From Zygnema circumcarinatum SAG 698-1b (taxonomy: Eukaryota > Plantae > Zygnematophyceae): 64,000 nt of DNA. Numbering within the stretch: position 1 is the stretch's first letter; each line of letters opens with the position of its first letter. Shown piece by piece: positions 20,157 through 26,100 of this stretch. Both the position numbers and the translations under genes were made by a program. The notes under the pieces are model-generated. The model was given only the letters and a program-made list of their open reading frames with translations, did no database searches and had not been told where the DNA came from. The stretch covers positions 1,736,001 through 1,800,000 of the forward strand of contig CM074804.1 in NCBI GenBank assembly GCA_037447605.1, given 5' to 3'.

Positions 20157-23100
20157 TCCCTCCCACCTCCTCTGCCCCTACCCCATTCCCACTCTTCGAC
20201 ATTTTCCGCTTTCCAATTTCCGTCTCCCTACGCCCATCCGCCTCTCCTCTCAATTCTTCCACTCTCCACCATCCTTCCCACTCTCCCTTCCACTTCTATC
20301 CTCTCCCTTCCACCCTCCCTCCTCTCCTCTCCCGTTTTCCTCTCCTCCTCTACCCTTGCCACTTTCGTTTCCTCCTCTACCATCTCCTTCCCCTTCCCCT
20401 TCCCCTTCCCGTCTCCCCCCTCCCCCTCCGCCCTCCCCCCTCCCTCTCCCCCTTCCCCCCTCCACCTCACCCCCCACCCTCCCCACTCCCCCCTCTCCCC
20501 TTCATCCTCCCCTCCCCCCTCTCCCCACCCCCCTCCCTTTCCTCTCCCTCTCGTCCTCCTTCTCCCATCTCTAACTCCCGTTCTCCCTCTTACAGGCCCT
20601 CCTTGGGGAAAGCCTTGTGGCGTGTGGTAGCCTTCCCCTTCCTCATTTCGGGCCTTCTGAAGCTTCTCCACGACTGCCTGCAGTTCATGAGCCCTATTCT
20701 GCTCCGCGAGATTGTGCTATTTCTGCAAAACCCTGACGCTCCCTTTGAGGAAGGGCTCTTCTATGCTCTCCTTCTGCTCACCTGCAACCTCATGCAGTCG
20801 ATCTGCATTCACAGCTACTTCCACAGAGTCTATCGCATTTCCATTCATGTGAGCCCTTTTGCCCTTGCCCTCTTGCTGAAGCGATTTATGGGAAGGTCCA
20901 AGTTTTTTCGCCTTGTTGGAGATTCTTCAAAAGTAGTCATTGGAGTCGCCGGGTTTCTATCCATTTCAAATTTGATGATAGATGGTAGGTCCTTTCTTGT
21001 TCAAGAATGATAGGATAGAAGAATAGAAGTGAGTTTCGCAGTTCCTTACCGCTTGATTAGAACGGATTTGGAAGTAAAGCGAGCAAAGAGGTCATTTTAA
21101 AAGAAGGAATGAATGTAAGCTCTTTTATTTTTCTTGGTGGTGTGGGAGTGGCAGGTGAGAGCTGCTCTTGTTTCTCTCATTTATCGAAAATCGCTTCGAA
21201 TCAGTGCTACCGCCCGGCAAAGCACCAGCATTGGCCAAATAGTAAGGACTTTTTCATTCCTTTTTGATCTCCATATATACCACAAGGCTTAACTACCGCA
21301 ACCCTAAAAATGGTCCTAGAAATTCCCTATTTTTGAAAGGTCCTGATCGCCTTGATGTTTTTTTGAAAACTATGTAGACTCTGACAGACCAAGATTTCCT
21401 AGTAGTCGGTAAACTGAAACTCTTGAACTCCTTAATCCTAAATGCCTGCAACCTTTTTCAATTCTAAGTACTTACATAAAACAAATATCATGGGAAATGC
21501 TGCTTGCAGGTGAATCTGCAGAGCAATGATGCCGAAAAGCTGTCGTCTCTCTGCATCTATGTCAACATCATATGGAGTGGGCCTTTCCAGATCCTCGGTC
21601 AGTAGATACGCTTCAAACCCTAAAAAACCCTTTTTTCTCCTGAAATTGACGTAGGCCATTTTTCTGATTGGGGTATAAATGGGGTACATGATGTTCTGCA
21701 GGAGCTCTCGGCCTCCTCTTTGCAATTATTGGCGTTATTCCGGGTAAGAGCCTGCTCCTCTTCTAACGAAGGAAACCCATGGACCTGTTTGAATTAATTT
21801 AAAGAAGAACTACATTAGTTAGTCGTTATGCAAATTGTTGGTTTTGTAAGCTAAATTTAGGTTGAGTTTGAAGACATTTACTTTGGTTGAAAGCTCAGCA
21901 AGTGACCTCCGTTCCTTTGGACTAACAGATGAAGTCTGCCGGAGAGAGACTAGAATTGGGGCTGAGTGGGTACACAAGAGGGAGTGTCTTTGAGAGGGAG
22001 AGCGGGAGAGAGCGAGTAGTGGGACAGCATGGAAGTGAGAGCACTAAACGGGAGTGATGGCGAGAGCGTGAAGTGCCACAACCATTGTGTATAGAGACAC
22101 AGACAGACAGACAGAGAGCGAGAGAGAGAGGGGGACGGAAATGCCTAAAGTGATCAAAATTGAGTTTTTTTTTTTCTTCGGTGGTTGCAGCTCTAAGTGG
22201 GCTCGTGGTGATGTTGCTGTTAATGCCCTTCAGCGCTTTCATGATGCGCTTTTTGACTCAAGTCAGAAAGCGACTCGTGCAGTGCACCGATGCGCGAGTC
22301 AAACTTATCTCTGAAGTCATCGGTGGGATACGGGCCATCAAGCTGTATGCATGGGAAGATCCGTTCCAAGAGAGGATTGACAAACTGCGAGACGCGGAAA
22401 TGAAGGAGATTCAGACCACTATCATATTGGGTATGTATTATGGAATGCAGAAACATAATTCAGTCAGCCATTTGTGGGACTACAAGTCATAAAGATTATA
22501 GTTATTATATGCATTTGAATGCCTAATCAGCATTTTTGGAAACTTTTTCCCCTATTACGGTTTCGAGGGACTCGGGTTTCCGAAGGTTGTAAATCGTAAC
22601 AGTTCTAAGGATATTTAGGGCATTTTTGGAGATTTATTATTGCTGGGTCGAAGTTTTTTGCATTTGTTCAAGCTCGTAGCACGATTTCACGGACAGTGGA
22701 TGTGTGGGGCTCTCCTCTCTCTCTGCCTCTCTCTCTCCTCTCCCTCCCTCCCTCCCAGGTGCCCTCACCTTCCTGGTCTACTCCCTCACTCCCACCCTCG
22801 TGAGTTTGGTTGCTCTCGCGGCCTTTGTGCCGCAGGGCAACCCACTCACACCCGCCATAGCTTTCCCCGCCCTCGCACTGTTCAATCTCCTTAGGTGCGT
22901 CGTCTCTCTCGCTCTCTCTCTCTCTCTCTCTCTCTCTCTCTTTCTCTCTCTCTCTCTCTTTCTCTCACGGGGAGCCCCTTACTCCATCAAGCCCTACAAG
23001 CCTTAGGGAGTCCTTAGAATTCTGGATCTGTCCCCACTATCCTCTCTCACGGCCTGTTAAACTTTACCCTAGAAACACTGCAAACCCTAAATGCTTTTTT

Positions 23101-26100
23101 TTCTTTTTCTTTGTCTGTACGTCTGTCTGTGTGTCTGTTGGCCAACCCCCTCTCCCTTCCGCTTTCCTGCTCCCTCTCATCAACCAACTTATCCTACTGT
23201 CGTCACTCTTCATGGTCCTCTCCCTCCCTCGCTTTGTAACTTCCATCAACCCCCACTTATTCCCCGTCCCCCCTCCTCTCTCTCACGCTTCACCTTCGTA
23301 ATCGATCTTCTACCCCTTCCTCAACCTCCCTCTCCTTCCCTGTCCCCACCGATTCTTTATCTCCCGATCTGTCATTTCCTACCCCTCCCCATCATCTCCT
23401 CTCCCCACTTTCTCACCCCTCTCCTTCACAAATTTATCCTCGCATACTGTCGCTGTCCCCCTCCCTCTATTGAATTCCGCTCTTCCCATCTTGTTCCTAT
23501 CTCTCTCCCCCCACTCTCCTTTGCTTTCCCGACCGCGCTCTCTCTCCCTCCCTCCTCCTCCACCCCTCTCTCTCTCCCCACCTCTCTCTCACACATACAG
23601 CCAACATCCAGCGCATCATCATAAGCATGAACATGGTGATAGTAGCCCTGTGCTCGTTTGCGGCCTACACCCTGTTGGGCTTCGTGTTGGAGGCTGCCGT
23701 GGCGTTCCCTGCGCTGTCTCTGTTCAACCTTATGCAGTTTCCGTTAAGCATGCTGCCACGTCAGCTCAACAGCTTCATCCAGGTACACTGCATCTTGATG
23801 GGTTTTGGGTCTCCCTTCCAGGTTTCCCATGCTCATGCTTCCGGATCAGCTTACGAGCTTGGTTCAGGTGGGCTGTTCACCCGCCTCCGGAGGCTGAGAG
23901 AGTGCGTGAGAGAGAGAATGAGGGAAAGGCGAGGGGAAAGCGAGAGAGATGGAGAGGCAGGAGAAAGGGAGTGTGATAGGGAGAGAGAGAGATAGAGTGG
24001 GGGGGGGACCATGCATCCTACTGTTCTTCAGTCTCTCTATACCTTTCTCCTCTTCCAAAACACAAATCTTCCAGACTCGTTCATATTTTTCTCACCCGCA
24101 CAAGTTTGGCTGCCATTCTGAGGGATCAGGCCGGAGTTTCGGTCGGCCGGCTGGAGAAATTTTTGGATTTATCCGAAACTGTAGCGGTAGAGAAAAACCC
24201 CGAAAGCCCTCCCGGCAGCGCGGAGGTACGGAACGGAAAGTTCACATGGAGCGGCGACGAGGAGTGCCTTGACCCCACTTTGCGCGACATCACTCTCTCT
24301 GTTTCGCCTGGCGAATTGCTCATCGTTGTGGGAGAGGTGGGCGGTACTACCACCACTTTTGAAGCAGGTTCTATGAACGGAGTGTGAATTAGACGATCGC
24401 TTTTCTTAGGTCTTTCGTTCTCTCTCTCGCTCCCTGTCTCTCTTTCTCACTCCCTCTCAATCTCTTCTCTTTCCGTCTCCTTCGCCGCCCCTCCACTCCA
24501 ATTCAGCAGCCACGAAAATGTGCACGTTTTCCTCTCGTTCACCTTTTATGTCTGTACATAATCTCTCATACTTTCTCTACATCTTCAGTTTTTCTTTCGT
24601 AGTTTTGTTTTCCTTAAAATTTCTGTTTCTTACTTTGAGTTTTCGACCAATGGCGCGCTGCCAGGTGGGCTCGGGGAAGTCCTCTCTTTTGGCAGCCATG
24701 CTCGGGGAAATGCGGAAACTGGGCGGCTCCGTTTTCCTCAACGGAACTGTCGCATATACTTCTCAGGTATTCTCACCTTCTCCTTCCCCACTTTGATTGT
24801 TTGGGTGAGATATTCTTTATGGACTGGTTTCTTCTGGAAAGTTTAAGCTTATTTTTTCGTTTATATTTTCTCTACAGGACCCCTGGATTCAGAATGCCAC
24901 TCTGCAGGACAACATTTTAATGGGCAAACCAATGGACCGAGAAAAGTACGAAAAAGTACTTTCCGTCTGTGCTCTCCGGGAAGATCTCAAGCAGCTTCCG
25001 GGAGGTGGGTTTTCATCATAAATTATCCTTAAAAATGTACGCATTTTAGACTGCAAAAAACAAATTAAGATCATATACTTTTAGAAACTCTTATTATGTT
25101 GTACAACTAGGCTGAATTCTAAAAAAAATAACCAATCCCCTGAAACTCTATATTGAAAGTTTTGAAACGTCAAATCTACAAATCTTTGTTCCCGAAGGAT
25201 GTTACATGTTAGGGTTTTTGGATTTGCAGGCGACCAAGCGGAAATCGGTGAGAAGGGTGAGTCGAGATATCTCCCCTCCTTCCCTCTCCCTCCCTCAGTC
25301 TTGAAAATTGCAGTTGCAAAATCATGACATGAAATGTAATATTTTCGTTCATAGCACTGATAAAGCGTTTTTTTCGATGCATATGTGTACTCCACTCCTT
25401 TGCGGGCTACGAGTGTTTTTACTTTGCAGTAGTAACTGTGATTCATTCCCATGCAGGCATCAACCTCTCCGGGGGTCAAAAGCACCGCGTGGCCCTCGCC
25501 CGAGCGGTGTACCGAGAGGCGGAGATTTGCCTTCTGGACGATCCGCTCAGCGCGGTCGACACACAAGTTGGTCAGTCCACTGCAGAACCCTAAGGAAGGG
25601 AGAGGGAGAGGGAGAGGGAGAGGGAGAGGGAGAGGGAGAGGGAGAGGGAGAGGGAGAGTGTGACCGAGAGAGCGAGTGGAGAACGTGAGAGAGAGAGTGA
25701 GAGCGAGTGAGAGATACTGAGAGTGGGAGGGAGGGGGGGGAGGGAGAGAAGGATGGGAGGGGAGGGAGGGGAGGAGAAGAGGAGTGGAGGGTGGGGAGGG
25801 AGGGAGGGAGGGAAAGGGGGGGTGAGTGAGTGAGTGAGGTGAATGGGAGTAAGGGGAAGGGGAAGGGGAGGGGGGGATTGGGAGGTAATCCATAATGTCT
25901 GTAACCCGAAAGACTTATTCTGCCCTCACCATCCGAAAAGTTTGCACTTCAGACATCCAAAAGTTGTATTTCTTACAACTATATACGTCCGTACTTCTTG
26001 CATAATTCCCCTTGAAGCACCCCTTGGCCCGCCTGCCTGCAGGCCGCCATTTATTCGATGAGTGCATTTGCGGCGCATTGCGCGAAAAAACGCGAATTTT

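What the first reader, a model, noticed from the sequence alone, without database searches (positions are those of the whole stretch)
22759..23867. Interleaved mutually exclusive exons swap the substrate-pocket helices of an ABCC transporter
Seen: the upstream exon ends in phase 1 at 22430, and two homologous routes lead to the phase-0 exon at 24130. Route A is A1 22759-22894 (136 nt) plus A2 23822-23867 (46 nt), encoding [61 protein letters not shown]. Route B is one exon, 23601-23782 (182 nt), encoding [62 protein letters not shown]1+A2 equals B at exactly 182 nt, the two align without gaps, both are open and both have canonical AG/GT sites. B lies inside the A1-A2 intron. A1 to B and B to A2 both frameshift, and B-A2 are only 39 nt apart, so exclusivity is built in. 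Known: this segment is the last helix pair of TMD1 (TM10-11 in MRP1 numbering), which lines the substrate cavity; A keeps the MRP1-like LRFP arginine and B has MQFP. Drosophila MRP uses mutually exclusive exon clusters around this region (recalled, verify). Inference: one gene makes two transporters of different specificity, a convergent splice-encoded specificity switch of a type rare in plants.
Basis: partly seen in the sequence, partly recalled or inferred. Interest (0 to 1): 0.92.

Follow-up and report, generated by a model that had tools for sequence, protein, structure and literature searches.

The report
Nested either-or exons in algal ABCC
A streptophyte alga's ABCC/MRP-type transporter gene really does splice in one of two old, diverged versions of the helix pair that lines its substrate pocket, and one version sits inside the intron that splits the other; this layout is unusual, but whether the two proteins carry different cargo is untested.

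Summary
Upstream exon 22191-22430 ends in phase 1. A1 (22759-22894) plus A2 (23822-23867) and B (23601-23782) each add 182 nt, are open, have AG/GT sites and are homologous (26/61 aa). Every other combination shifts the frame.

Assembled contigs from two runs of two studies contain both spliced forms between the same flanking exons, so both routes are used.

B aligns to human MRP1 558-608 (TM10-TM11). A keeps the Arg593 equivalent. B has Gln there and carries clade-specific arginines at the Thr550 and Met601 equivalents.

A is the ancestral type. Its sequence matches the single version in five streptophyte algal orthologues, and Closterium has an intron at the A1|A2 position. B is a derived type shared with three relatives:
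- A full-length mRNA is 80% identical in B, like its other exons (dN 0.16, dS saturated).
- One metagenomic contig has B as the only exon at this position.

Alternative exon arrays at this segment are known or visible in insect MRP genes, so this is a new variant of a known kind, with a nested layout.

Different substrate specificity is inferred, not shown. The scan had already noted either-or exon pairs in other genes of this genome, but none in this gene.

The parts
19651..29702 (+). ABCC/MRP-type transporter gene without TMD0. The first coding exon also appears at 17778-18035 inside a gap-flanking perfect repeat. The last exon is about 28326-29702.
   Evidence: tblastn of orthologues P0155 and P0061 onto the window maps about 17 exon-sized matches, one of them twice in the repeat. 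Pfam ABC_membrane and ABC_tran hit window exons.
22191..22430 (+). Constitutive upstream exon (240 nt). It ends in phase 1, and its donor serves both routes.
   Evidence: In X1 a 1221-nt contig ends exactly at 22430, and an X3 contig does too. Pfam ABC_membrane profile positions 145-216 of 274.
22759..22894 (+). Exon A1 (136 nt): first part of route A, covering TM10-equivalent, loop and the start of TM11-equivalent up to the split Arg codon.
   Evidence: X1 record 2 and X3 record 10 cover 22758-22892. 64% identical to the Closterium exon that ends at the same position.
22896..22969 (+). (CT)n tract just after the A1 donor. It is complementary to the GA-rich tract at 23896-24015. Any role is untested.
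23601..23782 (+). Exon B (182 nt): the whole of route B, an unsplit homologue of A1+A2 lying inside the A1-A2 intron.
   Evidence: X1 record 5 and X3 record 13, and the joint 23782>24130 in both runs. Aligns to MRP1 558-608. 80% identical to relative mRNA P0155.
23783..23821 (+). 39-nt spacer between the B donor and the A2 acceptor, too short to serve as an intron.
   Evidence: That it blocks B-to-A2 splicing is inference from general knowledge of minimum intron length.
23822..23867 (+). Exon A2 (46 nt): second part of route A. It completes the Arg codon and the rest of the TM11-equivalent.
   Evidence: X1 record 2 runs from A1 straight into 23820-23863. The joint 23867>24130 is in X1 and X3. 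In Closterium the A2-like part is fused to the next exon.
24130..24336 (+). Constitutive downstream exon (207 nt, phase 0), the linker into NBD1. Its acceptor serves both routes.

Best explanation
This is a genuine pair of mutually exclusive alternatives in one ABCC transporter gene of a streptophyte (zygnematophyte-like) alga. After exon 22191-22430 the spliceosome takes either A1 then A2, or B alone. Each choice adds 182 nt and joins the exon at 24130.

Exclusivity most likely has two causes. B-to-A2 splicing is blocked because only 39 nt lie between them. A1-to-B, A1 alone, or skipping all three shifts the frame into early stops, and such transcripts would be removed by nonsense-mediated decay.

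The swapped 61 residues are the last helix pair of the first membrane domain (MRP1 TM10-TM11), which helps line the substrate cavity. Route A keeps the ancestral pattern: aromatic at W553, Pro at P557, Arg at R593 and Asp at M601. Route B has Ile, Met, Gln and Arg at those positions, plus a new Arg at the T550 equivalent. The pocket's positive charges therefore sit in different places, and the two proteins probably prefer different anionic substrates.

A is the ancestral type, with its old internal intron. B is a derived type that a single event most simply placed in that intron, for example insertion of an intron-less copy.

Shown: the anatomy, the use of both routes in RNA, the homology mapping, and the conservation of both types. 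Inferred: the means of exclusivity, the origin, and any difference in substrate.
For: Anatomy and frames.

RNA:
- In X1 the two 239-nt contigs form a bubble between a contig that ends at 22430 and one that starts at 24127.
- Word depths are 21.7 (A) and 55.9 (B), against 69.3 and 110.6 for the flanking exons and 0-7 for the introns.
- The two 3' joints recur in X3 from another study, at depths 33.2 and 37.

Pocket mapping: (the B alignment to MRP1 puts Gln opposite R593), and the contact residues listed in PMC12647609.

A is ancestral and conserved:
- The single version of the segment in Spirogloea, Mesotaenium, Closterium, Chara and Chlorokybus is A-like, with the LRFP motif.
- A is 49-61% identical to them, as conserved as the flanking exons at 24-66%.
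- Closterium has an intron at the same A1|A2 position.

B is old and constrained:
- Window B, P0155, L001 and L002 form one clade with 97/93 support.
- P0155 is a full-length mRNA assembled in three RNA runs. It is 80% identical in B against 63-80% in the other exons measured. dN is 0.157 against 0.13-0.26 elsewhere, and dS is saturated.
- Contig L002 has only a B-type exon between the flanking exons.
- R5, R54 and the loss of R46 are shared by all four B-type sequences.
Against: - No transport or binding data exist, so a difference in specificity is inference from seven or so pocket positions.
- Only assembled contigs were available, not raw reads. Isoform ratios are rough, A1+B or other aberrant products cannot be excluded, and no condition dependence could be measured.
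- The 5' joints (22430>22759, 22430>23601) and the joint 22894>23822 were not listed in the joint table because they abut low-complexity tracts. They are read from the contig-piece table and from contig ends.
- Route A sits on a long terminal branch (0.85) in the segment tree, and no close relative with an A-type exon was found. Recent constraint on A is therefore less well supported than for B.
- Gln or Asn at the R593 position is normal in some fungal and animal ABCCs, so that change alone need not alter function much.
Confidence: 0.75

Rival explanations
1. B is the working exon. Route A is a leftover of the ancestral exon pair that is still recognised by the spliceosome, and it yields a poorly functional or merely tolerated minor protein rather than a second transporter.
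For: B is the only type seen in the relative's mRNA and the only exon in contig L002. B has the higher word depth in X1, 55.9 against 21.7. A sits on a long branch in the segment tree.
Against: A is open and keeps the family's most conserved motifs. It is 49-61% identical to orthologues separated by very long times, as well conserved as the constitutive exons. In X3 the A and B joints have similar depth, 33.2 against 37. A relic would be expected to have lost frame or splice sites over the time in which A and B fell to 50% nucleotide identity.
Confidence: 0.12
2. Both isoforms are functional, but what differs is not substrate choice. It could be transport kinetics, coupling to NBD1, folding or targeting, because the swapped hairpin also leads into the linker to NBD1.
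For: The segment ends directly before the TMD1-NBD1 linker exon. B loses the conserved TM10 proline, which could change helix dynamics rather than binding.
Against: Four of the seven MRP1 contact positions in this segment differ between A and B, and the charge pattern that differs is fixed across the B clade. This points to the cavity.
Confidence: 0.2
3. The two mRNA forms come from two loci or haplotypes, one of A type and one of B type, and the nested layout is an assembly artefact.
For: The same scaffold has a 10-N gap flanked by a perfect 1863-nt repeat 4 kb upstream, so the assembly is not flawless. No single short-read contig spans A1 to A2 through the low-complexity intron.
Against: Both forms share the flanking contigs exactly, and the bubble opens at 22430 and closes at 24127. 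Intron pieces between A1 and B (22975-23527), and unspliced pieces across the exon borders, match the window with 0-1 differences in two runs. In X3 there is depth across the 39-nt spacer between B and A2 (table 2).
Confidence: 0.04

Closest known systems
Insect MRP (Drosophila dMRP/CG6214 and orthologues) with clusters of alternative exons
   Same: Same transporter subfamily. Tandem homologous exons are used one at a time. A two-copy cluster covers the same TM10-TM11 segment in Timema and Anopheles gene models. dMRP isoforms are named by exon 4 and exon 8 variants (PMC6185855). Metazoan MRP exon arrays are described as independent, convergent duplications (PMC6071210 citing Yue et al. 2017).
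   Different: Those clusters are simple tandem arrays of unsplit exons. Here one alternative is split by an intron and the other lies inside that intron. The lineage is a streptophyte alga and the protein lacks TMD0. Selection by competing RNA structures, reported for insect MRP, was not tested here. I could not read the original dMRP gene-structure paper, so the exact match of dMRP exon 4 to this segment rests on the gene models seen here.
Mutually exclusive exons enforced by steric hindrance or by frame incompatibility with decay (textbook cases such as alpha-tropomyosin exons 2/3; own knowledge; mechanism outlined in PMC6071210)
   Same: Two homologous exons lie too close to be spliced to each other (39 nt between B and A2). 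Joint inclusion or joint skipping breaks the frame.
   Different: The close spacing is between B and only the second half of the other alternative. The A1-to-B intron is long, so that combination must be handled by the frame shift alone.
Human ABCC1/MRP1 TM10-TM11 pocket residues
   Same: The swapped segment aligns to MRP1 558-608, and by ungapped extension to about residue 548. It contains the equivalents of W553, V554, R593, F594, N597, I598 and M601, which contact substrates in cryo-EM structures (PMC12647609).
   Different: Human ABCC1 has a single version of this segment. The algal protein is a short ABCC without TMD0, and its substrates are unknown.
Other either-or exon pairs noted by this scan in the same genome (ion channel, MATE, ferroportin, P4H, GH31, RGLG)
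   Same: Old duplicated exons in one gene of the same alga, several with RNA support according to those notes.
   Different: Those are plain tandem pairs in other genes. None is in this gene, and none is described as nested. I did not check those notes.

Membership tests
ABCC (MRP) subfamily of ABC transporters | Full transporter order TMD-NBD-TMD-NBD, with ABC_membrane and ABC_tran domains | tested here: met
   Window exons hit PF00664 and PF00005. Orthologue P0155 has two of each and maps exon by exon onto the window at 57-90% identity.
ABCC (MRP) subfamily of ABC transporters | Closest solved relatives are ABCC members, not ABCB or ABCG | tested here: met
   Exon B and exon A1 hit only MRP1, ABCC2, ABCC3, ABCC5, YCF1 and plant ABCC2 chains.
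Long MRP1-type ABCC with TMD0 | N-terminal TMD0 domain (Pfam PF24357) | tested here: not met
   The algal orthologues of 1358-1432 aa lack PF24357, whereas the animal and fungal MRP1 hits have it. The window gene starts at the lasso-like region.
Mutually exclusive exon cluster | Alternatives are homologous, have equal length and phase, and each has its own splice sites | tested here: met
   182 nt each, 26/61 aa identical, gap-free, all AG/GT.
Mutually exclusive exon cluster | Each alternative is found in spliced mRNA between the same flanking exons | tested here: met
   contigs for both routes in X1, and the 3' joints of both routes in X1 and X3 (two studies).
Mutually exclusive exon cluster | Never both and never neither in productive mRNA | tested here: inconclusive
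   All such combinations shift the frame, and no such contig was reported. However, contigs drop rare forms, and joints next to repeats were suppressed.
Insect-type MRP alternative exon cluster | Exon choice directed by competing intronic RNA pairings | not tested
   Only a CT-tract/GA-tract complementarity was seen. It is low-complexity sequence that is common in this genome, and no comparative test was possible.

The most novel reading that the evidence does not exclude
An intron-less copy of the TM10-TM11 coding segment, for example derived from spliced RNA, was inserted into the intron that splits that same segment. This created in one step a self-enforcing either-or switch. The alga now regulates the A:B ratio to make two transporters whose cavities carry their arginines at different depths and so export different anions. 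Relatives then resolved the pair by keeping only B.
Probability: 0.3. Interest if true: 0.8.

Novelty: new variant of a known kind. Interest (0 to 1): 0.66.

Why it matters
Checked cases of either-or exons are few in the green lineage. This one has RNA support from two studies and evidence that both versions have been kept by selection.

The nested layout, with one alternative split and the other sitting in its intron, is not the usual tandem pair. It suggests a route to such switches other than simple tandem exon duplication.

The swapped piece is a well-mapped part of the ABCC substrate pocket. The two natural isoforms, together with relatives that kept only one type, therefore form a ready-made experiment on how the position of pocket arginines sets substrate choice in MRP-type transporters. 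The case also adds a plant-side example to the repeated, independent duplication of this exon seen in animals.

Tried and rejected
- **Joined A1+A2 model:** database searches were made exon by exon and by reference (B alone, A1 alone). The joined translation was built only inside local scripts from window coordinates, to compare with loci already fetched.
- **Word-indexed protein search:** the short exon peptides found nothing. This is a limit of the index, not evidence of absence.
- **Runs X8 and X9:** same species label, dated 2017. Nothing could be laid on the stretch, so they are uninformative.
- **Genomic loci of orthologues:** those for Spirogloea P0061 and Closterium P0042 were not on record. 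Closterium was reached through P0151 instead.
- **JGI metagenome scan with a B-type profile:** it gave only relatives of 54% identity or less, and none of the B clade.
- **Relics in relatives:** no B-like relic was found in the Closterium A1-A2 intron, and no A1/A2 relic in L002.
- **Hybrid isoform:** joining the A1 donor to the internal AG of B at the homologous point would add 181 nt and shift the frame, and B has no GT at the homologous donor point. It was rejected on the sequence.
- **dN/dS:** a ratio could not be computed for B because synonymous sites are saturated.
- **Literature:** the paper on convergent MRP exon arrays (PMC5711460) is not held. No paper in the library links these algae with mutually exclusive exons.
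- **Organism name:** not established. I can only say that the best orthologues are zygnematophyte.
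Full report
**1. The observation.**
- The exon ending at 22430 is followed by GT and leaves one base over.
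- A1 is 22759-22894 (136 nt), B is 23601-23782 (182 nt), and A2 is 23822-23867 (46 nt).
- All three have a pyrimidine-rich tract and AG in front and GT behind.
- Both routes, A1+A2 and B, add 182 nt and read through into the exon at 24130.
- The two 61-residue translations align without gaps. 26 residues and 91 of 182 bases are identical. The second codon position is the most conserved (39/61) and the third the least (24/61), which is the pattern of two old coding copies.
- A1+B, B+A2, A1 alone, A1+B+A2 and skipping all three each shift the frame and reach a stop.
- B and A2 are 39 nt apart.
- Minor corrections: the upstream exon starts at 22191. The downstream exon ends at 24336, because six letters are shared with the next exon at 24665.

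**2. Are both routes used?** One search for sequencing runs found seven runs that hold the stretch. I laid four runs on 22050-24450.
- Runs X1 (study P1, 2019) and X3 (study P3, 2023) contain spliced contigs, so they hold RNA.
- In X1 a 1221-nt contig ends exactly at 22430 and another starts at 24127. Between them lie two 239-nt contigs.
- One contig reads 22758-22892 and continues directly into 23820-23863 and then into the 24130 exon. This is route A, at word depth 21.7.
- The other reads 23600-23779 and then the 24130 exon. This is route B, at depth 55.9.
- The flanking contigs have depths 69.3 and 110.6, and intron pieces 0-7.
- The joints 23867>24130 and 23782>24130, both GT..AG, are listed for X1 and for X3 (depths 33.2 and 37).
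- The three joints that abut low-complexity tracts were not listed in the joint table. I read them from the contig-piece table and the contig ends.
- Runs X8 and X9 gave nothing.
- These are contigs, so depths are rough and rare forms can be missing.

**3. What the segment is.**
- Window exons carry the ABC_membrane and ABC_tran domains.
- The upstream exon matches positions 145-216 of the 274-position membrane-domain profile, so A and B encode the end of the first membrane domain.
- B alone hits human MRP1 residues 558-608 (E = 6.7e-07), then ABCC2, plant ABCC2 and YCF1. A1 alone hits the same place.
- In that alignment the glutamine of B lies opposite MRP1 Arg593, and A has arginine there.
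- A recent set of ABCC1 structures lists W553 and V554 (TM10) and R593, F594, N597, I598 and M601 (TM11) among the residues that touch substrates (PMC12647609).
- By the alignment and its ungapped extension, A and B compare as follows:

| MRP1 position | Route A | Route B |
|---|---|---|
| T550 | Phe | Arg |
| W553 | Tyr | Ile |
| V554 | same as B | same as A |
| P557 | Pro | Met |
| R593 | Arg | Gln |
| F594 | same as B | same as A |
| N597 | Leu | Ser |
| I598 | same as B | same as A |
| M601 | Asp | Arg |

- B therefore removes the usual arginine and places arginines at two other cavity positions.
- The protein and its algal orthologues lack the TMD0 domain of MRP1, so 'TM10-11' is MRP1 numbering.

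**4. Relatives.** A scan of 1.84 billion representative proteins with B and a search with the Spirogloea orthologue gave the comparison set.
- The orthologues in Spirogloea, Mesotaenium, Closterium, Chara and Chlorokybus, and in chlorophytes, each have a single, A-like version with the LRFP motif.
- A is 49-61% identical to the five streptophyte algal orthologues, no less conserved than the flanking exons at 24-66%.
- In the Closterium genome the A1-like exon ends at the same point. An intron of about 850 nt follows, and the A2-like part is fused to the next exon. The A1|A2 intron is therefore old. No B-like sequence lies in that intron.
- B belongs to a separate, well-supported clade (97/93) with three other sequences.
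- P0155 is a full-length mRNA assembled in three RNA runs of a related species. It is 80% identical in B and 63-80% in the other exons measured. dN for B is 0.157, against 0.13-0.26 for the others, with synonymous sites saturated.
- L001 and L002 are metagenomic contigs. In L002 the B-type exon is the only exon between the flanking exons, with no trace of A1 or A2.
- All four B-type sequences share Arg at segment positions 5 and 54 and lack Arg at position 46.
- B is thus an old, constrained type that can serve on its own, and A is the ancestral type that this alga has also kept.

**5. The same exon is duplicated elsewhere.**
- A Logan contig from another alga (L003) has two intact A1-type exons about 40 nt apart, plus decayed copies.
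- Timema and Anopheles MRP gene models contain two tandem copies of this segment.
- A contig in the metagenome set (L014) has four tandem copies, one with Gln at the R593 position.
- dMRP isoforms are named by their exon 4 and exon 8 variants (PMC6185855).
- Metazoan MRP exon arrays are described as independent, convergent duplications with RNA-structure control (PMC6071210). The original paper is not held.
- Ant MRP1 isoforms in my hit list differ at a second site in TMD2.

**6. Mechanism.**
- Shown: two routes, both used, equal length and phase.
- Inferred: B cannot be spliced to A2 because 39 nt is below any ordinary intron length. A1-to-B is sterically possible (706-nt intron) but shifts the frame, so it would be removed by nonsense-mediated decay.
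- What sets the A:B ratio is unknown.
- A CT tract just after the A1 donor is complementary to a GA tract just after the A2 donor. Pairing could bring the A1 donor close to A2 and bypass B. Such tracts are common in this genome, and I could not test this.
- Origin: a single insertion of an intron-less copy into the A1-A2 intron is the simplest history. Models that start from tandem duplication need at least two events. This is inference.

**7. Rivals.**
- A leftover A route that is merely tolerated. Its conservation and its share of transcripts argue against this.
- A functional difference other than substrate choice. This remains open.
- Two loci merged by the assembler. This is unlikely, because both forms share their flanking contigs exactly and the intron pieces match the window. 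The scaffold does, however, have a gap artefact 4 kb upstream.

**8. Novelty and score.**
- Alternative exon clusters in MRP genes are known in animals, and the scan has noted other either-or pairs in this genome (unchecked by me).
- New here are the lineage, the nested split/unsplit layout, and the evidence that relatives resolved the pair to B only.
- No paper in the library links these algae with mutually exclusive exons.
- I rate it a new variant of a known kind, with interest 0.66.

**9. Procedure notes.**
- The joined A1+A2 peptide was never sent to a search tool. It was built only inside local scripts.
An earlier scan note calls it a green alga related to land plants, and the best orthologues are zygnematophyte.

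Noticed in passing
window 16421-20156: A 10-N gap (18284-18293) is flanked by a perfect 1863-nt repeat (16421-18283 = 18294-20156). The repeat duplicates the first coding exon of the ABCC gene (17778-18035 = 19651-19908). This is most likely an unmerged contig overlap, not biology.
   Followed up: partly
window 22896-22969 and 23896-24015: The (CT)n tract right after the A1 donor is 70-83% complementary to the GA-rich tract right after the A2 donor. A CT tract before B (23549-23588) also pairs with it. This could loop out B, but it is low-complexity sequence of a kind common in this genome.
   Followed up: no
L003:5569-6445: A Logan contig of another alga has two intact A1-type exons about 40 nt apart, each with AG/GT sites. 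Several decayed copies of the exon's 3' end follow. This is an independent duplication of the same exon.
   Followed up: partly
L014:4001-7304 and L020:1349-1692: L014 holds four tandem copies of the TM10-TM11 exon in one ABCC gene, with Arg, Gln, Arg and Arg at the R593 position. L020 holds two copies. These look like an animal-type alternative exon array.
   Followed up: no
L004:6418-6531 (Closterium): A decayed partial copy (38% identity) of the exon upstream of A1 lies just before the real exon (6576-6815). The same is seen in the second Closterium locus, L005.
   Followed up: no
P0257/P0259 and P0262/P0269 (ant MRP1 isoforms): The isoforms differ by a homologous block of about 73 residues in TMD2, around the FFDTTP..GRIL motif. 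This is a second alternative-exon site in insect MRP1, distinct from the TM10-TM11 site.
   Followed up: partly
window 27583-28044: Three tandem copies of a 145-nt unit (87-88% identical) lie in the intron before the last ABCC exon. A perfect 130-nt tandem pair lies at 15098-15357.
   Followed up: no
window 31549-33113 and 35142-36275: The neighbouring genes look like a translationally controlled tumour protein (TCTP) gene in several exons and a single-exon mTERF-like protein. These readings come from the ORF translations only.
   Followed up: no
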